A DNA stretch of 63,833 nucleotides, counting the filler, from Pelomyxa schiedti (taxonomy: Eukaryota; Protista; Evosea): the NCBI GenBank assembly GCA_020536535.1. It is 9 parts of 9 records of this genome, joined end to end, with 100 filler letters (N's around TTAATTAATTAA, not from the genome) between each part and the next. Parts side by side here need not be neighbours in the genome. Positions count along the whole stretch, not along the records: positions 36,708 to 59,883 come from JAHLWZ010000259.1; 8 more parts are not named here. One strand, 5' to 3'. Shown here piece after piece: positions 39,354 to 59,883 of this stretch; positions within the stretch are counted from its first letter, which is position 1; every line of letters starts with the position of its first letter. Below the pieces are notes generated by a model. The model ran no database searches. It saw only the letters and a list, made by a program, of their open reading frames with translations, and was not told where the DNA came from. The position numbers and the translations under genes are program-made.

Positions 39354-40742
39354 TTAATTTGTGCTTATTGGTGTGTATCCGCGGTGGTCCTTGTAGTACA
39401 TAACAAGCCCAATAATGCCCAGTAAAGCGACTAATGAGCCTACACCGATTAAAGCAGCTCCAATTCCAATCATTGCAACTTGCCAGGATTCATACCGGGG
39501 TTCATCTGAAGATGAGGACGAGGAGGAAGAGGAAGAAGAGGATAGGGATTCGGATATGGACTCAGAGTTTGATAGGGAGTGTGATGTGGATGTGGATGCG
39601 GAGGTGGAGATGGAAGTGGAAGTGGATTCGGAGCCAGAAAGAGATTTGGATGTAGACAGCGATACGGAACTTGAAACAGAAGTGGAGGTAGAGGTTGACA
39701 TTGAGTCGGAACTTGAAATAGAGTTTGAGGAGGATATTGAATTGGATATGGAATTAGACGTGGATATTGAGTTGGATGTGGAAGAGGAGCTTGATGGTGA
39801 AAAGGAGAAGGATCCTGAATGTGAAGAATCAGAGGACGAAACTGAGTTAGACAGTGACTTAGATTCAGACACAGATAAAGAGCTGGATGAAGACTCGGAG
39901 AGTGAGACAGATTCAGATTCCGATGAGGAAAGCGAAGTGGAAGTAGATTCCGAAGAAGAAGATAGGGAGTAGGACAGTGACTGAGATAAGGACGAAGAAG
40001 AAGTCGAAGTGGATGAAGAGACAGAGTCGGAAGAGGAAAAAGAATCGGAACTTGATACTGACAAAGAGGAAGATAGAGAGTCAGAGGTCATTAGTGACTG
40101 TGATGAAGAAGATAAAGAAGCAGAAGTGGACGAAGACAAACTGCCTGACACGGAATCGGAAATAGAGGTAGAATATGAACTAGATGAATCTGAAACTGAA
40201 ACAGAGTCCGACATTGACACAGACTCAGAAACAGACTCCGACATTGAACGTGAGGCAGACACCGAAGACGACGAAGATGAAAAGGAAAACGACGCGGACG
40301 TCGATTCCGAAGACGAAGACGAAGACGAAGACGAAGACGCAGAGGAAGACGTGGACAGGGACGCCGACGCTGAATCAGACGACGAAGACAGCGACGACTC
40401 GGACGAGGACGAGGACGAGTGCGACGAAGACGACGAGGACGGGGCGTCGTCCCCAAACCACCGCCCAAGCCCACGACCGGCTGCCTGTTGCTGTTGTTGT
40501 TGTTGATGGTGGTCGTGATCGACGAGGAGGGTGGTGCTGCAACATCCTCCCCCTCCTCCTCTTTCGGAGGCGGCACCCTCGGCAGCCGCAGCCGCCACCA
40601 TAATGACCACCATACAAAGAAGAGTCGCCGCCGGCCGGCGTACGGCGCACGCGTGTACGACACTCGCGGGGACTCCCGCGGGATGTCTCTGTCTCCTCGC
40701 TGCTGTGACCCACCGTCGCTGTGCCATCACACGCAACGACAC
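39354..40742 (-). CDS. Ser-rich mucin-like type I membrane protein
   Basis: Hydrophobic N-terminal segment, ~300-aa Ser-rich ectodomain, TM helix VAMIGIGAALIGVGSLVALLGIIGLVMYY and a short tail KDHRGYTPISTN. The start codon is uncertain. Confidence 0.8.
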   Translation of the reverse strand: MSLRVMAQRRWVTAARRQRHPAGVPASVVHACAVRRPAATLLCMVVIMVAAAAAEGAASERGGGGGCCSTTLLVDHDHHQQQQQQQAAGRGLGRWFGDDAPSSSSSSHSSSSSSESSLSSSSDSASASLSTSSSASSSSSSSSSSESTSASFSFSSSSSSVSASRSMSESVSESVSMSDSVSVSDSSSSYSTSISDSVSGSLSSSTSASLSSSSQSLMTSDSLSSSLSVSSSDSFSSSDSVSSSTSTSSSSLSQSLSYSLSSSSESTSTSLSSSESESVSLSESSSSSLSVSESKSLSNSVSSSDSSHSGSFSFSPSSSSSTSNSISTSNSISNSISSSNSISSSDSMSTSTSTSVSSSVSLSTSKSLSGSESTSTSISTSASTSTSHSLSNSESISESLSSSSSSSSSSSSDEPRYESWQVAMIGIGAALIGVGSLVALLGIIGLVMYYKDHRGYTPISTN

Positions 40743-42179: not shown

Positions 42180-44461
42180 ATGTCGTCGTCGACACCAGCA
42201 GCGGGTGTGTCAACGTCCCACCCAACTTGTATTCGTCGCTTCGCGTTTGAGAGGGCGTTAAACGTGAACGAACGCTTTTTTTTTTTTTTTTTCGTTCGAA
42301 CGGCTTTGGCAGCCAAATATTAAGTTGTATGGTGTCAATAGGGAATAAAACATTTCGAATTTGGATTTATTTATCTCTTTAGAAAACAGGGTGAATGGGC
42401 AGTACCACACTGGGGGACCAAGATCACTGCCCCCTGCTACTTCTGTTGTATCAGTCCCTTACACTCTTGACTATGATGGTATCACTTTTTTTTTTCCCAA
42501 CAACAGTATGGTGGTAATATACATTGCTACACAGCAATTTTGAGGAGAGATGCCGAGCGTGTGTGGGATAAACCTACAATTCTACAGTACATCAGAGACA
42601 ACACTGTTTTCACTTGGGGAGCATCTGGTCCTTACTTCGACAATGCAATTCACCTTAAGAGTGGAAAGGGTTAGCTCTTCTTCATATTTCCTTCAACTCA
42701 GATGCCTTTTGTTGGCAACAGGTATTTACTTGTTCGATCTCGACGGAAAGAAGTACATTGACTGGAATTCTGGTGCTATGTGCTGCACACTTGGTATGGA
42801 CAATGAAGAAATTGCCGCCGCCGTGGAGGTTCGTGTCTTTTTTTTTTTATGTATGTTGAACTTAATACTGAAATCAAGGAACAAATGAGGGAACTTCCTT
42901 ATGCCTATCCTTGCTCGTTTTCGTGCCCAGTCAAAGCTAAGCTATCTGCACTCATGGCCGATATGTGCCCTGGCGATTTGAAGCATTTCTTTTTCACAAC
43001 TGGTGGCGCTGGTACACTCATTGCTTTATTTTCTTTCCCTCAAATTTGACAGAATCCAATGAAAGTGCCATCAGAATGGCTCGACTTTACACTGGAAAGA
43101 AGAAGGTAGGTCCTCGATCTGTGACTCTTTCTTCTAAAACATCTCCAGATTCTTGCTCGGTACCGCTCATATCATGGTGCAACAACCACAGCGGCTTCCT
43201 TAACTGGAGACCCAAGAAGGCTTCCCGCAGAGCCTGCTGATCCAAATATTGTGCATTTAATGGACCCATTTGGCTACAACTTTGATGTTCGTTTCCAAAG
43301 CATTTAATGATTGATTTAATATTGACTAGTGGGGATGCTTGTCAGAAGAGGAATTAACTAACAAGAATCTTCAATACATCCAAGAAGTTGTAGAGTTTGA
43401 AGGTATGTGGGAAAAGTGACCCGTAGCATCAACTGAAACGCGTAAAGGAGCTGGAACTGTTGCGGCAATCTTCATCGAGACCATTACAGGAACAAATGGA
43501 GTCCTGATGTATGTCCCCACATTTATTCATTTACTCTTACAAACAAATAAAATAGGCCACCCAGGGGATACCTGAATGGCTTGAGGGCCATCTGCGACAA
43601 GTACAACATCCTCCTTATATGCGACGAAGTCATGTGCGGGTTTGGCCGAACAGGTTAATACCTGAATGCCACGCTTACGCAATGCTCATATTCACTTCAA
43701 AAAAGGGAAATTGTTTGGTTTCATGCACAGTGATCCAATGATCATTCCCGACTTAGTCACAATGGCCAAGGGTATCAATGGAGCCTTTATCCCACTTGGT
43801 TGTGTTGCAATGAGGACCAGGATTTCTGATTACTTCAAGACCAAGCCAATCAGTGTAGGTTCTACATACAATTCACACCCCATTGGTCTTGCTTCTGCCT
43901 ATGCAGCTCTAAAGTGGAGGTATTCTTTCTTTAAGTTCATACATCCCGTTTTCCTTACTCACATCGAAACAGTTTGAAGAATAGGCTCTATGACCACGTA
44001 AAGGAGATGGAACCTGTCATGATTGATTGCATGAATCAGCTTGCCAGAAAGCACCCGTGCTTCAAGGTATTTCTTTTGATTTGTTTTGGTTTTTCCCTCT
44101 TCACTTTTAAAAGTAACTTTAATAAATTAATTTAATGGTGGTAGATACACCGTAAACTGAAACGCGAAACTAACCAAACGAATCAATACAACAACAGCAA
44201 GGACGTGTAGTTGGCCTCTTTGGCATCTTTGAATTACAGCGCAACTCCAGGGGAGAATGGCTCACTGGGTTCAATGGAGGAGTTCACCCAGCTCTTGATA
44301 AGTTCAAGAAAGCCCTTATTGAAAATGGTCTGATCACGCTCATGCGCTGGTCAAGCGTGTTCTGCAACCCTCCTCTGGTAATCAACGAGGAGCAAATAAG
44401 GGCCTCATTTGCCATCATTGACAAGTGCCTCCCAATCATTGATGAGGTCTTTGAGCCCTAA
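42180..44461 (+). CDS. Class III PLP-dependent aminotransferase
   Basis: [25 protein letters not shown]|[60 protein letters not shown]. Many introns; the start is uncertain. Confidence 0.92.
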
Positions 44462-44626
44462 GTAAAAAAAAAAAAGAGCCTGTTCTATGCCTCCGAAAAA
44501 CTTTATTTAAAAAAACAGAAAATTCTCCCCCATGTGACGGAATGTGTTGGTGTCTTTGTACCTGGAGGGAGTGAGCGTTGCAGTAAACTCTTGTGGGAGG
44601 ATATACAAGGTTGTCAATGGATGTGG

Positions 44627-45892
44627 TCAGCTGTTTTCTTGTTCTATGAGTTTCTGGCAGATGGCGGTGAAAATTTGTCTGATATTCTGCCCTGTTTTTG
44701 CACTGCATTCCATGCAGATTACATTGTAGGCATCACAGAAGTCCTTCTGACAAGTGTGCATGGGAACCTGCCTGCTTACTTCCAAGTCAAGCTTGTTTGC
44801 AGCAACAGCAATCACCATGTTTGGGGGTCCCCTTTCACGCAGCTCCACAATCCACGATTTGGCCACTTGAACAGTTTCCTACAGAAGTATTATTCACCGA
44901 CTTTTGAGAGAAAGTGCGGAGTTAACCTGTCGAGTGATAGAATACACTGTTCAAGAAAGTCAATATAGAATGCAGGGCTATCATTTGGAAAAATACCTAC
45001 GAGGGCTGCTGCCGCTCCTGAAAGGAAAAGATATCGTTAGTAACAGGGTGTAACAATAAAGAGGGATACCTCTATAGTACATTGGGGTCAAGGACCGAAA
45101 TCTCTCTGCATAATACATTGTTAATGACTTTAAGGGATGATTTGCGATAATTTAAGTGTGTAATGCACCATGGCCTTTGGTATCCCAAAGCTATTGTGAA
45201 GAACATATGAATGCATATTACGAATGTGAATGTGGATACCTCCAGCTTTACTGCTTGGCCACCCAAAACAATGGTGTGTGTACTGAATGAAGTCCTAATT
45301 TGTCATTGAGTAATTTCACCCAAAATGGTTTTTCAAACTACATAACACCGGCTTCCGGATTATCGTTCCATTCGTCCCTGACCAGTCGATTTAATATTGC
45401 CGTCTTTCCTGCCTCCATGTCACCCAGGAGCACAACCTTGACCCCTTTGTCCAGAGGTCTCCTTGGAGTTTCTCCTAAACCCCCCATCAACGTTAAACGA
45501 TAAGGTTCCACCCGACCCACATCATCAATTAATGAATTGAATGCACTAGATATTCCTCCAGTCACTGTTATTATTTACATTTTTTAGTACAAACACAACG
45601 ACATAGGAAACACACCAGAAGATGACGCCGACGACGAGGACGAGGAGGAAGAGGAAGAGGAGGAAAGGGAAGTTGTTGGGGGGGAGCCCGAGCACCTGGT
45701 GTCGCGGGAGGCAGCCTCCATGCACCGCGAGTGGGTCTTCATGCCGCACGCGTCGCAGCGGTAGCCCTGCTTCCCGAACGGGTTCTTGACGAACCCCTGG
45801 CAGTACTCGCACCACGTCGGCGTGTTGAACCGCGCCACCTGGAACACGTGCCGCTTGCTGCTGCTACTACTGCTGACACCGATGGCCGCCAT
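44627..45892 (-). CDS. C1-Rab5-like GTPase fusion (paralog B; G3 motif WDTKGH)
   Basis: C1: HVFQVARFNTPTWCEYCQGFVKNPFGKQGYRCDACGMKTHSRC. Rab: GDMEAGKT, LWDTKGH|ERFRSLTPMYYR|GAAAA, ANKLD, ECSAKTG. Confidence 0.85.
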
Positions 45893-46077
45893 CACCCCCA
45901 CCACCAATTTGGGTTGTATTTTTTCAGGTTCTTCGTGAATCATGCAGTAGTCGGGCCAGGCGAAGATGTTGAAGGAGGAAGATTCCGACTAGTGTCAGAG
46001 CTGCACTGATGAGATTCGGTGTTCCCTTCCCAGCCTTTCCCGGAAGGTCGCACTTCCCGGAAATTAGGATTCTTTTG

Positions 46078-47250
46078 ATGGACGGCGTATGGGAGAAATT
46101 GAAACGAACAGTCGGTGTTGTGAAGGACGACAACTGCAGGACGAACAATGATGGGAGCGTAATGGTGTTGTGGAACACGGAACGTTGGCGAAGGGTGTGC
46201 GTCGCTGTCATTTTTGGCTGCACTACGACGAGGGTGGGACCTCGCTGGTGGCGCAGGGATCGCGGTTGTGATTGTGGGATCAGGGACCTGCCGTGGCCTG
46301 TGATCAAGTCAATTTGTTTGCTGATAAAACCGGCCTTCTTTGGTGTATGTGTGTTTCCTTTTTTTTTTTGAGTCTTGGTTTTTACACTTATTCGCTTTGA
46401 TGATGTACTAGAATGAACTCTTCACTGAATAAATTGGAAATTCAGTTTAGGAACAATGAAGCCTTTTGGTTGAGGGACCAAGGACTGACTGCCACTAGAA
46501 TATTGGAAAGGGATGATATGTATTGGTGGATTCTCTCGAGTAATAGCTTTTGTCTGCCTGAAGACTCTGGAGTGGACTTGTCACGCCTTGTAATCAACTT
46601 TAATGAGAGAGCAACGTGTGGGTGGGGAGTCACTGGTGACCTCCTCACAGTTGACTTCAACCCAAAACAAAACGCCCGATGGAAGAAAAATGCCACAACC
46701 AGGTGCGTCCCTCACACAGTTTTCTCTGACTACCACCAATTTAAATTGCGCTACCCTTACACACAGGTGCTACAAAAGAATGTTCACAACAGGTGGTCTT
46801 TTGGTTGGAATCCTGGGCTACACATCTGAAATCGATGTCAGAACTTTCAAATTCGGCGGTGATTTCTATTCGAGGCCTCCAGGCTGCGAATACTCCGTGA
46901 TACTCCATTGTTACAACGGAGCAGTTTCTTGGAGACACACTGATTACTTCGTTTTATTCACACCATCTCCCAGAAATTATCCTGGGGCAATGGAAGAAAT
47001 TGGAACTGAGTTCACAGTTGAAGTTGACTTGGGTGCTGGAACCCTTGAAACCTTTGCTGGTGATGGGTCACTTGCCCAGCCAGTGGCACTCCCAAGGTTT
47101 GTTTTTTTATTTTGCCCCTTTACTTAATAAAATCATTCTCCCAAAACAGGGTGTCAGCACAAGGTAAACATATTCATTGGTATCACGCATGTGCACTTTT
47201 CTACAGGAACTCCTCAGTGAAACTCATCCCAACACAATACGGCTGAGGAA
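46078..47250 (+). CDS. Hypothetical protein, possibly SPRY-like C-terminus
   Basis: ORF fragments include GTEFTVEVDLGAGTLE. There is a frame break near 46700-46800. Confidence 0.3.
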
Positions 47251-47534
47251 TACAAAAACAAAAGGGCGTGTTATTATGATTAAATTTCTAAAAACTGTCA
47301 CCATTCAAAGGAATATTTGAAGGAGACAGCACCACGCTTTGCGGGTGAAAACAGTTTATAAAACTGCCTTACGACTGCCCGTGATCTCCATGGGCTAATT
47401 GATTGAGTCTTCTTTCTCTTGTGCCCGTCGATTATTAAGGCCGTCGGGAAGAGCCGGTATTATGGGTGTGCTCTCCGCCCCTCGTGTCCTCTTCTCTGTG
47501 GAGATGAGATGAAGTTGTGTGAAGTTATGTGAAA

Positions 47535-47606
47535 TTTGATGTGGTGTAGTTGGCAACATCTCTGACTTTCACTCAGTGGCCCCGGGTTCGATTCCCGGCA
47601 TCGGAA
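47535..47606 (+). tRNA. trnE-TTC: tRNA-Glu(TTC)
   Basis: A box TGGTGTAGTTGG, anticodon arm CTGA-CTTTCAC-TCAG, T arm CCGGG-TTCGATT-CCCGG, acceptor TTTGATG/CATCGGA (two U.G pairs), followed by an oligo-T Pol III terminator. Confidence 0.88.
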
Positions 47607-47693
47607 TTTTTCTTTTTTTTTGTTAGTGCCCCTTCGCGCTCTCTGTGGTTTCTTAGGTTGCTCGTTTCCAGAAGTGTACATTATTATTTGAGA

Positions 47694-50205
47694 ATGCAAC
47701 AAGAAGCTGTATGCGCGGCTATGGACGGTGCCAACGGCGTTGTGAACACAGCGTACATGGTCACCGCTGACCTCGAGGAGGCTTACGCGGCACTACGTGA
47801 CGTGTTCCCATACTCTGGATTCATCCCCTCCGCAACCTCGTACTCATCCAAAAACAACGAACGGGCCGCTGCCTTGAGGCGATCGCTGATCTCAGTCCTC
47901 AATGTGGGGCAGCAGTGCCAGACAGATTCTACTGCTACTACGAGTGCTGCTGGAGCTGGGAGTACTGGATTGTGGGACGAAACGCGGGTGGAGTCCGTGT
48001 TTAGGGTGGTTTTGAACTCGTGGGGGAATCTATTGCAATTGACGGGGACAATTTACACTACGGAGGATGTATGAATGTGTTGATGTATATATATACAATG
48101 TTATAGAAATGAGAGTGCCATTCCTCTTCTTTGTTCGGTTACTTCACTCGCTTGTTATTATTAATATCTTTCTTTCTTTCTTTCTTTTAGAATACATTGG
48201 AACACAAGTTCACAATGCCCGAGGGGCCGGGAGGCACCCGACTTTCTTTGGCTTTGTTATTTCACGTATCATTTCCGTTGCACTTTGAGCTCAAGAGATA
48301 CGGGGAATCCAGCACCGGTGTGAAGAGGTTTCTGCCACACATCTTTTTTGAGGTTTCCGCTTATAGAATTTGTGCAGAGCATTCCACGCCTATGAAAGCT
48401 CTTACACTATTATCGAGGATGTTGAACCTGGGGACTATGTACTACTCTGCACTGAGGAGCACAGCCCTTGCGAAGGACACGTTTTTTGTGTCGGAGGTAT
48501 GTGTAAGGGCCGTTTTGCCCCATTTTTTTTACTGTGCCCAGGCGTTGCAATTGATAGGGCCAAGTACAACGTGTTAAAACAAGCTGTTGAGGTTCAGAAA
48601 GAGAACCTTTCTGTACTCTCCAATGTATTCCTCGTGAAATTGTTATCATTTTTTGAGTCTTGCATGCAGAACCAACACCAGAAGACGAAAACGGCTGAAG
48701 CCAACTTCATTTCTCAAGGACTAGGCAATTTGCTTGACCTCCAGACATATCACCTGAGGTTACTGTGTGAAGCAAAGATCTGGAACAACAAAGCCCTTAC
48801 GGACCTAATGAAATCGGCAGCTCCTCCCTATTCTCTTCCAGAACACTTTGAAAGGCTCTTCCAGGGAACCACCAGCTGCGAATTCTCTATTCACGAGCAG
48901 GGATACAGTATGAACAACAAATCATCTCACAACACGAAAGTATTGACTCGCTTCCTCCAGATGAAACCAAGGAAGTTATTACTCTCAGGAAAGACGGCAC
49001 ATGTCGGTACACCTCTGAAACTTACAGCTGGAGCCAGATGGATGAGAGGAACCGCAGTAGTAACCGACTCATTATCGAAGGTGTTTGGGCAGCCTCAATC
49101 CCGAAAGCAACAGTATCATCAGAAACCACAACAGGCGGAGAGCAGCCACAAGCCCAGAACCAACAGCCGCTAGGGGTGGCTGACATTTCCCTCACACTTT
49201 GCACATATGTATTCAGAAGTGGAGCGCATGATGCAGTTGTGGAACATCCCAGTGGATTGGGCCAGCTCAGCTGCAAGCTTATTGAGCCGGCCGCGACCTG
49301 CACCTGCGGAAGCACGTTCCTCACTGATGACATAGAGGCCATAGAAGGAGGCACATCACAGTGCCACACACACAAACAGTACGTGCTGTGGACTAGCTGT
49401 AGGCTGAATGCGCGGCGAAGAACAGTTTTCACATGGAACCCTCTGACAACCCCACAATCGGAAGCTACCACAGCAACCCCACAAGAAGTTATTGCACCAA
49501 CATCAACAACAGCCACGGTGTCATCAGCAGTACCCATCAGCAATAACAGCCACAGTGCTGGGATTCCATCAGTTGGGCTGAATTGGGATGATTCCAAGTC
49601 AATGCTTGATTGGATTCTGTCCCCTTTTCTGTACATGCCAGTGATGCCTTGGTGGGCTCACCTTGTACTCCGCAGCAGGGATCAGTACGGGGTCATTTTT
49701 GAGATGCCAGGGACACTGTACCAGTGGTTACCGCAATACAATCCACCCTCACAAACAGACAACCCTCAGGGAAATCAAGTGTAAAATACCTTTCACTTTT
49801 GCAAAAATCAGTTTTTTACAAAAACTTGTTGTAGAGAGGCTAACGAAGCAATTGCAATTGCAACTGTCAGCCATCATGCCCACCTCTTCCCGCGATAGCA
49901 TGACCGCCAATACTTTGTAAAACCGTTTCCAGGCCAGTGCGTTGCGATAATGGGAAATGGGGGTGTTGGACAGAAAACTGGTGTCATGGTTGTTTGTGAA
50001 TCAAAGCAGGGTCAATGAGGCACAAATAGGAAATTATCAACAACCTAACAAAACGTCAGTCAATGGCAGTGATTGGGAGTCCAAAGCAAACCAGTTCGGC
50101 TTGTCAACATTGGAAAGGTGGCAAAGAGGTTCGCCGGTATCACTGGCAAGAACCTGCCCTGTGGATAGCGTGATGCTCCCAAGTGGCTCATACTGGTTGG
50201 TCTGA
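47694..50205 (+). CDS. Hypothetical multi-exon protein
   Basis: Long successive ORFs (47694-48074, 48197-48577, 48370-49173, 49038-49784) can be joined by GT-AG introns, e.g. ~48908-48960. No domain was recognised. Confidence 0.55.
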
Positions 50206-50329
50206 AGAAGTATCGAATCATCCTTGAGAGTTGCCATAAATGCCCTCAGTCCAATGTTGTCTGTTGCTATGTATGGACTGTTGCTAACTTCTCCAAGATA
50301 TTTAAGGGACCTAGACAGTGGCAGGAAAA

Positions 50330-52993
50330 TCAATTAGAGAGGAGGCAAAAGGAGGAGGAGAAACCTTGACAGAACTGTAATGCCAGATGCAGCTTGCTTG
50401 ATGTATGCAATCACTTCACCCATCATATTCGCACAGCAAGCTGTCATCCCATCTGGTGTCACTGAAAGAGGAAATGAGAACTTTCTGAAAGGAAAGGNNN
50501 NNNNNNNNNNNNNNNNNNNNNNNNNNNNNNNNNNNNNNNNNNNNNNNNNNNNNNNNNNNNNNNNNNNNNNNNNNNNNNNNNNNNNNNNNNNNNNNNNGTA
50601 ATGCCAGATGCAGCTTGCTTGATGTATGCAATCACTTCACCCATCATATTCGCACAGCAAGCTGTCATCCCATCTGGTGTCACTGAAAGAGGAAATGAGA
50701 ACTTTCTGAAAGGAAAGGCAAGCTTTACCTTTGGGCACAAAATAAGCTCGCGGTGCGTTGTCAAATGCAACAACAAGTGTTGCGTCTGCTGGTGGAACCT
50801 CCATCAGAGTCCCCTCCTCGAAAGAGGGCGGCAATGTAGGCCCCCTCTTTGTGTGGCGCTTGAACGGATTCTCCCAATATGATGAAGAGATAAGAGGCTG
50901 TGCAGGAAGTGGCACCGCAGAAAATTCTGGAATAACTCTCCGGGGGAAGAAGAAGAGCATAATAGCTACGGCAAAATTGAGGAATGCAATGCACGCCAGC
51001 ATGCCCCACATGATATGAAACCCTCTTGATGTGGGCCAAACTTCATCACTTTCGCACGAGGAACTTCCGGATCCACTGCAGCTGCCTGTTGAAGTGACAA
51101 CATAGTTCTGGTCCATCACGGCGTTTATCAAAATTGGGCCGAGTGCTTGCCCAAAGAATCGTACACATTGCAGAAAACTCATTGCTGCTGGGTAGAACTT
51201 CTCTGGAACGAAGTGCCTGAGAAACCNNNNNNNNNNNNNNNNNNNNNNNNNNNNNNNNNNNNNNNNNNNNNNNNNNNNNNNNNNNNNNNNNNNNNNNNNN
51301 NNNNNNNNNNNNNNNNNNNNNNNNNNTTCTGGTCCATCACGGCGTTTATCAAAATTGGGCCGAGTGCTTGCCCAAAGAATCGTACACATTGCAGAAAACT
51401 CATTGCTGCTGGGTAGAACTTCTCTGGAACGAAGTGCCTGAGAAACCCGATCATACATTAGATAGATCGTTGAACTGTAACAGTAACATACCCAAGTGCC
51501 GAAACAGCAGGGATACTTGCAAATACAAATGCAGCACCAAGGAAAGCCTCCAGTACAGCGGTAAGCCAGACTGTATGAACAGGCAAGAAAAGAAGAAATA
51601 ACACGCAAAGTGCAAGTGCGCCAAAGACAAGCATCAGAGCAACCCATATCCTTCTCTTTGATAGCTTTGCAACAACCAACCCGAATACAATGTACTCAAG
51701 CGGAACAATGCTCATAAGCAGCCCAGCTTTCCAAGACTCTTCAATGCCCAAGCCATTGGTTGGCGATCCTGGAGGAGCCTCAAGGAAAAACGGCATGAGT
51801 TGATAATATGCATTCGATGACAGAGCAGACAAAGTTCCAACTGTAACGAAATGACTTGAATTGAGAGAGATTGGAGAGCGAGAATGGAAAATTACTGCAA
51901 GAAATGATTATCATCGATGGCCCCAATAAAACAACCATGGAGAGCATAACAGGCTTGTTTTGGGCTTCTCGTCCAAACTCCCAAAGGCCGAAAGACCAAC
52001 CAAGGCATGCACTCAGTAAAAATCCAAATATCGTCGCCACTGAATACCAACCCCAAACGTCGCCTTCAGTGATTGAAACCATCAAGACAAGTGCAGAGAG
52101 GCCAAGTTGAGCGCATCCCAGCCAATCGATGTGCGCCTCCTGGCAGAAAAGGGGTTAGCTGTAATCATTTTTTATCGCAAAGTTGGAGCCTACCTTTTTA
52201 ATATTAGATAGAGGCATGAGTTTCTCGAACTTGGGGATCAGAGAGATGAGAAGCAAACAGAGTGGTATGAGAACCAAAAAGGCAACAACAAAGAAGAGAT
52301 AGTGCCAGTCCATCACTGACACCAAGACACCACCGAGAATCAATCCTGCTGCAATTCCGGTGCCGCCCATTGAGAATAAAATTGCATCTGATCCTGGTGG
52401 TCCATACTCCCGAGCATCAGACATTGTTAAAGAGGCCATACCGGCACAGCCACCCTATACCATAACAAGCATGCAATCAATGAAATTGTGGTAAAGGAAT
52501 GTGAAGTACCTGCAAGAATCGGCACACTATCAGGAAGAAAATATCTGGTGAGAAACCGGCTGCAACGGTGGCAATGAAATAGAAGAAGAGGGTGGAAATC
52601 ATGACGTTCTTGTTGCCAAACTGCCTGCCCAGCTGAACCAGCACTGGTACAGTCACAACTCCACTCATCATGAAACCAGACTGCACCCAGCCTATAACTC
52701 TAAGTTACAGGAAGCTCAAAACTTTCTTAAACCCAATAAGAAAGACAAAAAAAAAAGCCCTCTGAGTATTGTATTGTCATTATGTTAGGTGCATTGCATA
52801 GTTTGTATTTTGGGCGCCCAGCACACATAATCCCATAATCTCATTATCTCATCACATACCAATGTACTCTAGGCCGTACTCGTTTGCGATCTCAGGCGTG
52901 GCAGACACGAGCATGAGCTCCTGTGACATCATGAGCACGTTGACAAGCGCCAGCACAACCACGTGGAAGGTGTTGAGCCGACGTGGCGGCGCC
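50330..52993 (-). CDS. MFS transporter (drug:H+ antiporter DHA2/EmrB-like); 5' end lies in a gap
   Basis: Many TM segments. VTVPVLVQLGRQFGNKNVM (motif A-like), FLIVCRFLQ|GGCAG, GLILGGVLVSVMDWHYLFF, IDWLG, RFFGQALG. Confidence 0.85.
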
Positions 52994-53093: not shown

Positions 53094-56000
53094 CACCACC
53101 AACCTACCGTTATTCCCCTCACGAGACTGCGTGTTGCATTGTGCTCCGGCCTTAGCGAGGACCGCCAGGTCGGCAGCTGGCTACTAGACAGAGTGGGCCT
53201 GTGGTCCCTCAAATTTCCGGCACTCAGACGCTGGCTCTCCCGCCTATGTGCTGACTACGCACTTCGGTTCGAGGCTGATGGTCTCTCTGCCAGGATGTGG
53301 GCGTTGTGCCCAACCAGTGTTGCGGATTTCCTCGACTGGTAACTTTTCTCACTTCAGCTAAAGGTTCCTAATTGGCAAAACGAAACTTTTGATTAACAGG
53401 ATCGAAAATCCAGCAAGCCGCCCTAAGGACGATGTCTTGACACACCCGATTATTATCTCCGCCCTTTTGGTCCTTTACTCGTCTTCGTGCTTCGTGGCCT
53501 CGGCCCTGTCCCATAAGCCTGGCGGCGCAACCGACGATGACCACTTCTCCGGCGACGACTCCGCCAACTCTGAACTTGACGATGACAGGCGGTTTCGTTC
53601 TTTCGTGGAATCATTCGACGTGGCGATTGGATATTGTGGCGGGCTGTGGTCGTCTTGTGCTATATCAAAAGCAGGTTTGTAATTTGCCATTCTGACCCCA
53701 TAATCTAGTTCCTTTGCACACGTAATTTAAGTGTCCACTGCCATTTGGCATTTTGCTCATTTTTTTTTTTTGCAAAGATTCACTGGACAAAATGAGAGAA
53801 ATATGTCTGGAGGGCATGATTCTTGGAGATATGCTACTAATGGATGTGATTGAGGCTCACACAAGATTGTGGGGAAAGCAGGCAATGCTTCGGCCGTGGA
53901 TGTGTTCTGTCAAGGGTCCGTTGGAGGTCCTGGAGGAGAATGTCAATACAGTCAATTGCCAGTTCCCAACCACGCCAATATCGGTGTCAATCAGACTGCG
54001 ACCAAATCATGCAGTTGTATGTGGTGTGTTTTCTACTATCTTTTTTTTTTTTTAACCTTCTTTGCCTACTTGGGGAAAGCAGGTGAAGAAGTCCTTTTTT
54101 TATTTATAAAATAATTTGTAATTTTGTAATTTATGAAGCTTCGCAATCCCTCATTCGTTCCATGATAGGTCACCCTGATGCCCTTGACAAACTCGTATGT
54201 CTTCTTCCACTTCAGTCGAAGTTATTGCCTGTCCATGAAGCCTTCCACATGCCATTTTACCAAAGAGAAGTCTTGGAAGCCTTCCTGAGAAAGTATCCCC
54301 AAGAACGGTATTCCTGCTGGGCTCCAGTCCCGAATGGCTGTTCATTTATCAGCACGAGCTCCCATACAGACGTATCTCAGGTTTCATCCCTCTTTTAGTG
54401 GTCAAGTCTAATTCCATGGCAGTTGGATGCAGTCTCATTCGCGATTCAGCTTCAAAAGGATTCACTGGAACAAAATATCAATTGGCCTGAAACTGTCAAG
54501 TAAATTCTCCCATGTCCCACACACTCTTTCTCAGTGTCTTCAGGGCTGCCATTTCCCACAACCGAAGAGGAAACTGTGACACCATTGAGATATTTGACTT
54601 CGGCCCGTCTGGGATCGGTGCGTTGACACATAACTTGTGTACCACCATGTTCCAGAAGACATGCACAATTTTCAACTGTGTCACTGCACACGATCCACCA
54701 AAGATAGCGTCGGAACCATCCATGTCTATTATTACCAGGGCCGCAACAAAAATTGACATCACATCGCTGACACCAGTCGAGATAAAGGTCTTGGAGATTT
54801 GGTGCGAAGCACTTGGATCACCACCAGACTCCATTGACAAAGAATTCTTTGCGGCAGGCGGTGACTCAATTGCAGCCCTCAAGGTGCTTGCTTCCACCAA
54901 CAAGTTGGGGTGGAACATGAACCTCTCTGACCTTTTCCGCAACTCAATTACAGTCAGATCCATGGCAGCAGCGGTATCAGCTGTGGATTCACACCACCCT
55001 TGCAGTTTCAATTGTTACTCACCAATAACCGCAAGGAGATCGACCAAGGGAATAATACCACTGTCACCTGCACAGAACAGGCTGTTCTTCTTGGATCAGC
55101 TTCAGCCGAACTCTGCTCAATACAGTGTCTTCATCGGATTTCACTTGCTTGGGCACCAGGAATCGAAGCCCCTGTGGGAAGCCATCCGCGTCATCGTCAA
55201 TCGCCACGAGAGCCTCAGGACAACCTTCTTCATGCCTTCGTCTTCATCGACAGAGGAAGCAGCAGAGGGAACAGGGCAACCATGCCAAAGGATTCTCTCC
55301 CCAGAAGACTCTGCACATGCAATTGGAACAGCTGAGTTTTTTTTCAAACCAGAGACGGAAACCACAGATACGAAGACAACTGACGATGATGATGAAGAAA
55401 GCCATTATAACATGAAGAAGAAAGAGAAATGGCTTTCCGATCAGTGCCAGAAGGAAGTGAAGAAGCCATTTGATCTCCAAACGGGTCCTCTTCTCAGAGT
55501 GACCCTTTTCCGGCTGGATGAGGAAGAAGACACCGTTCTGTTCTTAAACATTCACCACATCGTCACCGATGGGTGGTCGTTGGTTCTCTTCCTGAAGGAA
55601 CTGTCCCATCAGTACAACACCCAATTAAATCTGCTGACAGCATGCAACAATAGAATAAGCACCTCCCACCAAGTCCAAAGTTCTCCATTTCCTCCACTCC
55701 CATTCCAATATGCTGACTTCGCCATTTGGCAAAGAGAGGTGCTGCTGACTCCCGCGAGCGAGTTGAGGGAGAAGCAGCTGTCATTCTGGAAAAAGGAGCT
55801 TGATGGAGTGAACGACATTTGCCCACTTCCACTCGACAGGCCAAGGACTGACAAACGCACTTATGCTGCAGGGGCACACTCCCACACAATCCCAGCATCC
55901 CTCTTTTCGGACATCGCGGCCCTTGGGAAGTGCATGTGCACAGCAACACCATTCGTTACGGTCTTGACTGTTTTCAACATCCTCTTGCACCTCCACAGCC

Positions 56001-59000
56001 CCCGATGGAACCGAGAGGAATCCCCACGGAGCGACATCGTTGTTGGGATACCAACGGCCAACAGGCATTACCCAGGCGTGGAGTCCCTCATCGGGTTCTT
56101 TGCCAACACTCTCGCGATCAGAACCGTCGTGGAGGACGGCGATTCGTTCAGAAAAACACTGGAGAAGGTGAAGAGCAGGGTGATTTCAGCACAGGGAGCC
56201 CAGGACATTCCATTTGACTGGGTCGTGGATGCCGTGGGTGTGGAGAGGCGGCTGAGCGTGCAGACCCTCGTTCAGGTCATGTTCGTGATGGATGACTGGA
56301 ACTTCGCCGATTCTAAAACCTTCTCGATGAATGGAATCAGGGAGGTGACTCAAATTCTGGACACCGAGCCCGTCATCTCCAAGTTCGATCTCACTCTCAG
56401 GGCAGTCCCACAACGAAACGGCACACTCCACCTCCAATTCGAGTTTGCCAGAGATATCCTGGATGATTCCACTGTTGCTCGGATTGCAGATGACATGGAA
56501 CAGATTATGAGAAGCATTGTATCTTTGCCTGACAAGCCTATTCGTGAGCTGCCCTGCATCAACGCGGTGGATATCAAGCGGCTTGCCACCTGGAACGAGA
56601 CAGAAAAGGAGTATCGAGGTCAAAGTGTCGAACTCCACAAGGCGGTTCACTACTTGTTTGAGGAGGCTGTTGTGGAACATGCTTGTCTCCCTGCGTTGAA
56701 GTGCGGGAATGTGATCATGAGTTACCGGCAACTCAACCAGAAGGTGAACCAGTTTGCGCACTTCCTGAGGTCGATTCCAGGCGTGGAGCCAGGGAACTTC
56801 GTCCCAGTTGTTGCAGAGAGCTCGGTGGAGTTGTTTGTTGCGATTTATGGTGTTCTTAAGGCTGGTGCTGCATACATCCCAATCGACCCTGAGGCACCAC
56901 CCGAGAGAGTGGCGTCAATTCTGGAGGATGTTGCAGCCGTTCCAGTCATACTTCTCTCCCACAGGTCCCTTAAATCTTGCCTGTCCTTATACTTGGAGAG
57001 GTCCAGCAGCTCTCCCAATGCTGCGGTGATTCCCACAGTCATTTGCCTGCACGAGGACAGTGACACGTGGAAGTCTTTCCCAAAAACCAACCCACCACAC
57101 AACATCAGAACAGGAAGGGAAGAGGTTTACGCAATTTGCACATCTGGATCCACTGGGAAACCAAAGGCTGCCATAAACACTCACATCGGGATCTGCAATT
57201 GGGCCTTGTGGGCGAGGGAGGGGCTGAAGTTGACAAAGAATGACAGGGTGCTTTTCAAGACTCCGTTCTTCTTCGATGCTGCGAACTTTGAATCATTTGC
57301 ACCACATGTCTTGGGTGCCTGTGTTGTGGTCGCGCCACCAGGGGCACACAAAGATCCTGAAGAGATTGTCAACTTGGTGGATGACGAACGCATCACCTTC
57401 ATCTTCCTTGTTCCCACCGCGCTGAGGGAGTTCACCAGCGCTGTTGTGCAGAAGAAAAAGGAGCAGTGGCAACAACACACTGGCAATGAAACCAGAGGTA
57501 AAGTGACGAATGGATCGGCAGTTTGCAACTCTTTGAGAATGGTGATGGCTGGAGGGGAATCCCTTGACTGGAGCCTTGTTCACCAGGTCTTCGAAACACT
57601 GGACAGCAGCCAAGTCGCATTATTAAATGCCTGGGGACCCTCTGAAACCGCCTGCAGCACAACACTCCTCGACTGCTTCCAGGCACTCAATGAGCACCCA
57701 GAGATGGAATTGAACCATCCAGTGGTTCCAATCGGGAAGCCAATCTCCAATGTGAGGATTCTGATTCTGGACAGGAACATGCAACAAGTTCCTGTTGGTG
57801 TTGTTGGAGAGATATATGTGTGTGGGATTGCAGTTGGGAAGGGATACCTCAACAGACCAGAGGTGACTGCCGACAAGTTTGTCAGGACAACCACGCTCAC
57901 ATCCGATGGGAAAGAGTTCGAGGGGTTGACGTTTTACAGGACCGGTGATCTTGGGAGGTTCCTTGAGAGCGGAGACATCGAGTTCCACGGGAGGATCGAC
58001 TTCCAAGTGAAACTGCACGGCCTCAGGATCGAACTGGGAGAGATCGAGAAAGCGATTCGCAGCCACGAAGTGGTTGACAACTGCACCGTTATTCTCAGAG
58101 AAGATTCCTTCCCAATCAGAAGGAAGTTCCTTGCCGCGTACATTGTTCCAAGAGACAAATCGATAAACACTCTCAAGGCCAGCTCAGTTCCTTCTGCCAT
58201 CAACACCAGCCAGTCACAGGCACTGGTTTCAGAAGTAAGCCACATCCTGCAATCCAAGTTGCCACCGTACATGGTTCCGAAATCCATCACGGTGATGAGC
58301 AAACTCCCATGCACGCCATCTGGGAAGGTTGATCGGAAAGCATTGCCGGTTCCATGCGCCACTGCTGCACCAGTTCAAGATGATTCCTCGAGTTCGGGAA
58401 TTTCCGAGGAGCCCACTGTTGTTGGGTGTGAGGAGGAGAAACTGTTGCTGAAGTGCTGGAAGGAGATTTTGCCCGGTGGTGGTTCGGGTCTCACACTGGA
58501 CACCGATTTCTTTTCAGCGGGTGGGGACTCCATCATGGCACTGCAGGTAGCGTCGCGGGCACGTGCCTGTGGACTCAAGGTGACTCTGCGAGACTTCTTT
58601 GAACACAAGACAATTCGCAGGATCAGCAGTTGTGCCGCCTCAAAGCTTGGTGCCGTTTCTGTGAGCATTGCAGATGAAAGACATCAGATATCACATCTCT
58701 CACCGGGTATTGAGCATCCTATTATCCCACAAGAGCTCCTGGAGTTGCTGAAGGAGAAAGGAATCACAGAGGACCAAGTTGAAGAACTTTTCCCAGCAAC
58801 ACCAAGCCAAGTGGACATTCTCGAGAGTTGTTTCCGCAATAATAATGGTGATGTGGGGGGAATGTACAACGTTCAACTCCGCATCGACTACGCAGGTGAT
58901 CTGGATGTTGCTTCCTTCAAGAGGTCCTGGGAGATCATTGTTCAAAACCATCCTGCCCTTCGAACTGCAATAATCTCTCCATCCCAACCACTAAATGGCG

Positions 59001-59883
59001 GAGACGTCTCAAAACCCAGCAACACCTTAAACAAGCGAACCACAACAACATCACCACTTGGAGGTCCCTTTTTCCAGGTTGTTTTGAAGCACGTTGACCT
59101 CGAGTGGGACCAGCAGGATTTGCCCGCACTTGAACAGTCCCTCACAGATGAAGGAGACGATAATACCTCCCAGGGTTACCAACTGAGGCATCAAATTGAC
59201 GAAATCGCGGCCGAGATGAGGGAGGCTCCTTTCAACTTCGAACAACCAGGACTTCTCCGTTTCCACATTCTCAGGCACACACCACCACCACCACAAGCAA
59301 GACCCCTCATCACTTCCCAAACAACGTTCCTATGTGATCTCCACCACCTCATCATTGATGGTTGGAGCATGGCAAATATCATCCACCAACTCCACGAGAC
59401 TTATGCCTCATTGACCGGTGTCAAGGAGGTTGTTTGTCACCACCACCACCCAGCGACGTCTCCACCACCTTCCACTGCTGCTGCTACTTTGCCGATGATC
59501 AATGGCGACGGTGGGAAGGGATGCTCCATCACCCGCGACTTTGTGAAGTGGCTTTCAGGGAGAGACCACGCTCAAGCCATGGAGTTCTGGAACAGATACT
59601 TTGACGGTTTTTCCGAACCCACACCTCTGCCTCTGTGCAGTAACAACAACAACAGCAACAGCAACAACAACACAACCTGTGCCAAAACCAAAGATTCCAG
59701 CACCACCTGCAACTGCAACAAGCCTCTGTTCCACTTCGAAATTGGGGCTGAGCTCACAAGAAAAGTGCAGGATTTCGCCAAGTCACACAGCACAACCGTG
59801 AACGTGATCCTCCAATTGATTTGGGGTCTGGTTCTCCGCACTCTCTCGGAACCAGCAGGAACGCCCGCGGAAGTGACATTCGG
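53094..59883 (+). CDS. Non-ribosomal peptide synthetase: FAS-type (starter) acyltransferase - T - C - A - T - C (5' end in gap, 3' truncated)
   Basis: AT: W|IENPASRPKDDVLTHPII, AIGYCGG, VVC|GHPDAL, LLPVHEAFH, INW, IFDFGPSG. T1 FFAAGGDSI. C1 HHIVTDGWS. A TSGSTGKPK, FDA, WGPSE, YRTGD, QVKLHGLRIELGEIE, PSGKVDRKALP. T2 FFSAGGDSI. C2 HHLIIDGWS. GT-AG introns at 53339-53399, ~53675-53778, ~54025-54168, ~54381-54422 and ~54500-54543. Confidence 0.93.

What the first reader, a model, noticed from the sequence alone, without database searches (positions are those of the whole stretch)
53094..59883. Spliced protist NRPS initiated by a FAS-type acyltransferase with a Cys nucleophile (SAT-T-C-A-T-C)
Seen: a complete T-C-A-T-C line. 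It is preceded, through five spliceosomal introns, by a domain that follows the acetyl-transferase of the fungal FAS beta subunit (WIENP.S.P..D.L..PI, FLPV..PFH-like LLPVHEAFH, ILDFGP-like IFDFGPSG). The catalytic GHSxG reads GYCGG. Known: GxCxG is the starter-unit acyltransferase (SAT) signature of fungal non-reducing PKSs, whereas lipopeptide NRPSs normally start with a C-starter or FAAL-ACP. Inference: an acyl group is loaded from acyl-CoA or FAS onto T1 and condensed with the amino acid on T2, an unusual lipo-initiation route. The introns argue against bacterial or symbiont contamination. This is the best candidate for an undescribed system in the window.
Basis: partly seen in the sequence, partly recalled or inferred. 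Interest (0 to 1): 0.9.

Follow-up and report, generated by a model that had tools for sequence, protein, structure and literature searches.

The report
Amoeba peptide synthetase with starter acyltransferase
An oxygen-avoiding amoeba has a family of peptide-assembly enzymes that begin with an acyl-loading domain otherwise known from fungal fat and polyketide synthases, a combination I could not find described and that probably makes acylated peptides.

Summary
The gene is real and belongs to the anaerobic amoeba Pelomyxa schiedti (NCBI KAH3764772.1). Six stop-free exons and five GT-AG introns give SAT-T-C-A-T-C; both ends run into assembly gaps. One intron is seen spliced in an RNA contig and all five positions recur in paralogs. 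A paralog's copy of the front domain folds like the fungal FAS-beta acetyltransferase and NR-PKS SAT domains (Z 12-15, low-confidence model). The more telling find lies elsewhere: one copy sits in frame between the ACP of a highly reducing PKS and the first NRPS carrier (KS-AT-DH-MT-ER-KR-ACP-SAT-T-C-A-T-C-A-T), and one is free-standing. Best reading: the domain moves an acyl chain, probably from a PKS carrier, onto T0, and C1 joins it to the first amino acid. No close relative was found outside Pelomyxa and no paper I could search describes the architecture. The chemistry (load T0, then condense) is known from fungal lipopeptides; doing it with a fused SAT appears new. Nothing is biochemically tested.

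The parts
53094..53338 (+). Exon A of the SAT-like acyltransferase (RVALCSG loop); open to the N gap, start codon not in the assembly
   Evidence: Stop-free; matches first exon of paralogs P0005/P0003
53339..53399 (+). Intron 1 (61 nt, GT-AG, phase 2)
   Evidence: same position in paralogs
53400..53674 (+). Exon B with the nucleophile motif GYCGG (Cys codon 53635-53637)
   Evidence: Pfam SAT E 0.089 for the exon; Ser at the same place in six other copies
53675..53777 (+). Intron 2 (103 nt), RNA-supported
   Evidence: Joint skipping 103 nt, GT..AG, in RNA run X4 only
53778..54023 (+). Exon C (helix after the nucleophile, lacking the malonyl-binding Arg; ferredoxin-like subdomain)
   Evidence: 40-45% identity to paralogs; Arg register, residues
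54024..54168 (+). Intron 3 (145 nt)
   Evidence: frame-breaking indels between runs fall here
54169..54380 (+). Exon D with the catalytic His of the AFH motif (54246-54248)
   Evidence: Aligns with AFHS of an extender AT; His kept in all copies
54381..54422 (+). Intron 4 (42 nt, in-frame stop)
   Evidence: same donor position in paralogs; unspliced in one RNA-library contig
54423..54499 (+). Exon E (ends NWPETVK)
   Evidence: matches paralogs
54500..54543 (+). Intron 5 (44 nt, phase 2)
   Evidence: same donor in all paralog loci that reach it
54544..54720 (+). Start of exon F: end of the acyltransferase (IFDFGPSG)
54780..54990 (+).
   Evidence: GGDSI; PP-binding; bounds approximate
55049..56563 (+). 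C1 condensation domain, LCL-like, HHIVTDG intact
56657..58327 (+). Adenylation domain; pocket residues read as DAFFMGACSK
   Evidence: substrate not determined
58442..58630 (+).
58784..59883 (+). C2 condensation domain of another class (closest to DCL-type structures), HHLIIDG intact, cut by the gap
49984..52993 (-). MFS transporter gene, head-to-head with the NRPS; same pairing at paralog locus L006
   Evidence: Pfam MFS_1; 70-83% nucleotide identity to L006; bounds approximate

Best explanation
The gene is one of a Pelomyxa family of NRPSs that start with a SAT/FAS-type transacylase and an empty carrier (SAT-T0). The Cys (Ser in the other copies), activated by the His, takes a non-carboxylated acyl chain from a donor thioester, most likely a polyketide on the ACP of a partner reducing PKS, and passes it to the phosphopantetheine of T0. 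The A domain loads an amino acid on T1, C1 joins the two to give an N-acyl amino acid, and C2 extends or releases it using parts lost in the gap. The neighbouring MFS protein may export the product. Shown: exon structure, domain order, fold class (on a paralog), intact catalytic motifs, the paralog architectures. Inferred: every chemical step, the donor, the product and export.
For: Fold search on the family model ranks fungal FAS-beta AT (Z 15.2, 13.9) and NR-PKS SATs CTB1, PksA, CazM (13.2, 12.9, 12.2) above extender ATs and FabD (11.6 or less); Atlas features give SAT clusters at 0.96; Pfam SAT hits all four aligned members. Nucleophile and His register with GHSxG and AFHS. At L003 the same domain lies in frame after KS-AT-DH-MT-ER-KR-ACP, which has no release domain, and before T-C-A-T-C-A-T; the genome paper's model Pelo_9594 starts with that KS and ends in the SKL that ends the NRPS (PMC8887013). 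HR-PKS-to-SAT hand-over is established for fungal NR-PKSs (PMC10401856). C1 resembles elongation C domains, fitting a carrier-bound donor. A PPTase is annotated (Pelo_7030). Exonic indels between runs are all in frame (3 of 3), intronic ones are not (0 of 6).
Against: No biochemistry or metabolite. The model has mean pLDDT 50 and is of a paralog alignment, not of this copy. No PKS is on this scaffold, and the PKS-fused copy is the most divergent. Its PKS ACP motif is GIGSL rather than the usual GxDSL. The loop that reads FGGQG in FAS ATs (own knowledge) reads CSGLS here. RNA coverage is thin and one RNA-library contig is unspliced across intron 4. No RNA contig was tested across the PKS-SAT or SAT-T junctions.
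Confidence: 0.5

Rival explanations
1. The domain loads T0 directly from a free acyl-CoA (acetyl or a short fermentation acyl-CoA), like the FAS-beta acetyltransferase; no PKS partner is needed for this copy.
For: Top structural matches are FAS-beta ATs. No PKS near this gene. The amoeba makes acetyl-CoA by fermentation (PMC10579272). The site of the malonyl-binding Arg is hydrophobic here.
Against: Does not explain why a copy sits between a PKS ACP and T0 at L003. FAS-AT and SAT Z-scores are close and the model is weak.
Confidence: 0.27
2. In this copy the acyltransferase is decaying or only structural; the Ser-to-Cys change is a tolerated substitution, and T0 is loaded in trans, for example by the free-standing copy P0125.
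For: Cys is unique to this copy and one base from TCT. Long branches for exons B and C. Catalytically inert SATs exist in active NR-PKSs. A free-standing copy exists.
Against: Cys is a working SAT nucleophile; the His, all exons and frames are intact; no stop or frameshift among the differences between runs; exon D has a short branch.
Confidence: 0.13
3. The domain is an editing acyl hydrolase that clears wrong acyl groups from T0, as AT-fold hydrolases do in trans-AT PKSs.
For: AT-fold acyl hydrolase PksD is among the fold matches (Z 9.0).
Against: SAT and FAS AT score much higher; no other loader for T0 is fused or adjacent.
Confidence: 0.06
4. The architecture is an assembly or annotation artefact, or comes from a symbiont or another eukaryote of the mixed culture.
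For: Fragmented single-cell assembly; cultures were polyxenic and polyeukaryotic; C and A domains look bacterial.
Against: Single contigs in two runs span 53094 to about 55100, across SAT and T0; the SAT-T-C join recurs at four other distinct loci with shared introns; neighbours are intron-rich eukaryotic genes.
Confidence: 0.04

Closest known systems
SAT domain of fungal non-reducing PKSs (PksA, CTB1, CazM, AfoE)
   Same: Same fold class; GxCxG/GxSxG nucleophile plus His; sits at the start of an assembly line; can take a chain from a partner HR-PKS or FAS.
   Different: Followed by T-C-A, not KS-MAT-PT-ACP; no sequence relative at E 0.001 among 1.84 billion representatives; also occurs fused after a PKS ACP and free-standing.
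Acetyltransferase of fungal FAS beta subunit / mycobacterial FAS-I
   Same: Best structural match over the whole domain (7q5s residues 164-571, Z 15.2; 4v8l Z 11.4); DFGP-type end motif.
   Different: About 13% identity; no ER, DH or MPT domains follow; GYC/GYS instead of GHS.
Fungal lipopeptide NRPSs with an acyl-accepting first T domain (emericellamide EasA-D, pneumocandin GLNRPS4/GLPKS4)
   Same: T0-C-A-T start; HR-PKS chain loaded on T0 by an acyltransferase (proposed; PMC3901194, PMC3672099).
   Different: There the chain is released, activated by a separate acyl-CoA ligase and moved by a separate acyltransferase; here the transferase is fused and of SAT fold, and no ligase is adjacent.
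Fungal PKS-NRPS hybrids (PsoA type)
   Same: L003 paralog joins a KS-AT-DH-MT-ER-KR-ACP PKS to NRPS modules in one chain.
   Different: Hybrids go ACP directly to C (own knowledge); L003 inserts SAT-T0, has two modules and ends in T-SKL with no R or TE domain.
Bacterial lipoinitiation by starter C domain or acyl-ligase-ACP (surfactin, iturin)
   Same: Gives N-acylated peptides (PMC11751314).
   Different: C1 is LCL-like and preceded by a carrier; no acyl ligase domain.

Membership tests
NRPS | C-A-T module with intact motifs | tested here: met
NRPS | Release domain (TE, R or terminal C) | tested here: inconclusive
   3' end in a gap; C2 is cut; the complete paralog P0002 ends in T without TE/R
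NRPS | PPTase in the genome | tested here: met
   Pelo_7030 listed in PMC10579272 supplement; its activity on these carriers not tested
SAT / FAS-I acetyltransferase fold | Alpha/beta hydrolase plus ferredoxin-like AT fold, closer to SAT/FAS-AT than to FabD | tested here: met
   on paralogs, model pLDDT 50; this copy linked by 33-58% identity exon by exon
SAT / FAS-I acetyltransferase fold | GxS/CxG nucleophile elbow and His | tested here: met
SAT / FAS-I acetyltransferase fold | Transacylase activity onto a carrier | not testable with these tools
   Needs an assay
Fungal NR-PKS | SAT followed by KS-MAT-PT-ACP | tested here: not met
   SAT is followed by T-C-A
Fungal FAS beta subunit | AT followed by ER-DH-MPT | tested here: not met
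Malonyl-specific extender AT / FabD | Arg that binds the carboxylate, about 25 residues after the nucleophile | tested here: not met
   Register; hydrophobic here and in L001, L004; Arg present in L002, L006, L008; register uncertain by one residue
Starter-C lipopeptide NRPS | N-terminal starter C domain | tested here: not met
   C1 follows a carrier and matches elongation C domains best; no formal subtype phylogeny was run
Emericellamide-type T0 lipopeptide cluster | Clustered HR-PKS, acyl-CoA ligase and free acyltransferase | tested here: not met
   Neighbours within 10 kb upstream are MFS, three unknowns, aminotransferase; downstream side missing

The most novel reading that the evidence does not exclude
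Pelomyxa has built an undescribed PKS-to-NRPS relay in which a SAT-type transacylase moves a polyketide from a PKS ACP to an NRPS T0, existing as free enzyme, N-terminal NRPS domain and internal domain of a roughly 5,300-residue PKS-SAT-NRPS with a peroxisomal targeting signal; the expanded family, with differing A-domain pockets and acyl sites, makes a set of unknown acyl peptides in an anaerobic amoeba that houses bacterial and archaeal symbionts.
Probability: 0.45. Interest if true: 0.85.

Novelty: new variant of a known kind. Interest (0 to 1): 0.72.

Why it matters
It would add a further way to start an acylated nonribosomal peptide, using a fused SAT-T0 didomain, and a natural PKS-to-NRPS junction that could interest assembly-line engineers. 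It also shows a sizeable, unstudied secondary metabolism in an anaerobic Archamoeba: the two genome papers do not mention NRPS or PKS in their main text. The Ser and Cys copies, with and without the Arg, form a natural series for asking what sets SAT donor choice.

Tried and rejected
Search for the domain outside Pelomyxa: profile against 1.84 billion representatives gave only Pelomyxa proteins and one weak actinobacterial PKS AT (E 2e-4; two-sequence profile); word-indexed searches gave only Pelomyxa (length-limited); pattern scans of metagenome and GTDB genome contigs gave nothing; Atlas search with SAT-T-C gave no cluster above 0.78. These do not exclude distant relatives in unsampled protists. 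Sequence search of the PDB was only suggestive (E 0.26-2). Paper searches for the architecture found none. Rejected: Cys as sequencing error; Cys as family signature; the ATG ORF at 52862 as the gene start (it is the antisense of an MFS exon); my first acceptor for intron 4 at 54449; NCBI's extra 45-nt intron in exon D and its frameshifted tail (paralogs keep those residues; the tail closes the model at the gap). C-domain classing by context failed for lack of E domains among hits.

Full report
Source and observation. The long frame 54512-59881 is identical to NCBI protein KAH3764772.1 of Pelomyxa schiedti, labelled only 'non-ribosomal peptide synthetase'. It carries T-C-A-T-C with intact carrier serines and C-domain histidines. 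Upstream, five stop-free exons are separated by GT-AG introns of 61, 103, 145, 42 and 44 nt whose phases fit. Intron 2 is skipped in a contig of the RNA run; three other runs of one sample cover the region unspliced, and single contigs span the acyltransferase and first carrier. Another RNA-library contig is unspliced across intron 4, so RNA support is partial. Differences between runs include no stop; the three exonic indels are in frame and the six intronic ones are not; 11 of 26 substitutions are silent. Both ends of the gene lie in N gaps.

Method note. Whole-domain searches and the structure prediction used database proteins of paralogs by id (P0003, P0005, P0121, P0125). NCBI's own spliced model of this gene (P0001) was used by id in one Pfam scan (SAT E 6e-9) and two look-ups.

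What the front domain is. A model from four paralogs (pLDDT 50) matches fungal FAS-beta acetyltransferases (Z 15.2, 13.9) and the SAT domains of CTB1, PksA and CazM (13.2, 12.9, 12.2) ahead of extender ATs and FabD. Language-model features give SAT clusters first (0.96) and Pfam SAT hits all four members. Profile alignment puts GYSAG on GHSVG and AFH on AFHS of an ordinary AT. So the SAT/FAS-AT assignment holds; the data cannot separate FAS-AT from NR-PKS SAT ancestry.

The cysteine. Seven distinct copies were found in this genome (window, L001, L002, L003, L004, L006=L007, L008=L005). Six have Ser (TCT or TCG); only the window copy has Cys (TGT). All share the intron positions wherever the locus reaches them, and the window copy groups with the Ser copy L001 in exon D (95/94) and weakly in exon B. 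The Cys is therefore most simply a late one-base change. Since NR-PKS SATs use either residue (PMC10401856), it is compatible with activity but is not a signature of NR-PKS origin.

Three architectures. (i) N-terminal SAT-T-C-(A): L001, L002, L006/L007 and, by synteny, the window. The window gene is head-to-head with an MFS transporter as at gapless L006, where about 1 kb separates them, so a PKS is unlikely to hide in the 5' gap. (ii) Free-standing: P0125, 436 aa, ending at a stop. (iii) Internal: at L003 an unannotated copy begins at the end of a 2,225-codon exon encoding AT-DH-MT-ER-KR-ACP, preceded by KS exons and followed by T-C-A-T-C-A-T. The genome paper's supplement lists Pelo_9594 starting with that KS and ending in a predicted PTS1, SKL, the end of P0002 (PMC8887013; the middle of the sequence is cut in the stored file).

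Mechanism. In fungi, an HR-PKS without a release domain hands its chain to the SAT of a partner NR-PKS, and lipopeptide NRPSs are proposed to receive a PKS chain on a first T domain through a separate ligase and acyltransferase. The Pelomyxa proteins combine the two: a SAT next to T0, once directly behind a PKS ACP that has no other exit domain. I infer transfer of an acyl chain through the Cys/Ser to T0, condensation by C1 with the amino acid on T1, and further steps by C2. C1 resembles bacterial elongation C domains (about 35% identity); C2 is a different class whose best solved matches are McyB, BacC, SrfA and TycB domains, which I know as DCL-type, although no E domain precedes it. A-domain pocket residues differ between copies (DAFFMGACSK here, DAAFYGVCGK, DGLLIAHCCK); the window's looks hydrophobic (own knowledge, low confidence). 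The malonyl-binding Arg site is hydrophobic here but Arg in three copies, hinting at different donors. A PPTase is annotated. Confidence: active loader about 0.77 in all, split 0.50 carrier-bound donor and 0.27 acyl-CoA; inactive 0.13; hydrolase 0.06; artefact 0.04.

Novelty. No close relative of the domain was found outside Pelomyxa, and no searched paper describes SAT-T-C-A or ACP-SAT-T; the genome papers do not discuss these genes in their main text. The searches are weak for distant relatives and for protists without protein sets, and most subscription journals were not searched. All parts and the overall chemistry have precedent, so I rate it a new variant of a known kind. Interest 0.72.

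Noticed in passing
L003:758-17146: Giant KS-AT-DH-MT-ER-KR-ACP-SAT-T-C-A-T-C-A-T gene with C-terminal SKL; the NCBI record calls only the last 2,381 residues. A second PKS gene (KS, AT, carrier) lies head-to-head at L003:1-674.
   Followed up: partly
L003, P0002 residues 613-1086 and 1752-2225: The two A domains are identical over 474 residues with 2 nucleotide differences in 1,422: very recent duplication or assembly collapse.
   Followed up: no
L008:10001-11589: Free-standing SAT-like protein P0125 (Pelo_7205), annotated hypothetical; a 98% identical partial copy lies at L005 on the same scaffold.
   Followed up: partly
window 58784-59883: C2 looks DCL-type but follows a T domain with no epimerase; unexplained.
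   Followed up: partly
window about 42500-44460: Class III aminotransferase gene about 9 kb upstream of the NRPS; link to the pathway unknown.
   Followed up: no
window 44600-49800: Three called genes of 271, 316 and 591 aa with no Pfam family between the aminotransferase and the MFS gene; a tRNA-Glu at 47535-47606.
   Followed up: no
window 51107-51447: About 120 nt are repeated on both sides of the N gap at 51227-51326, an assembly overlap inside the MFS gene.
   Followed up: no
window 39354-40742: Long Ser-rich low-complexity ORF on the minus strand ending in a hydrophobic segment, like a surface protein.
   Followed up: no
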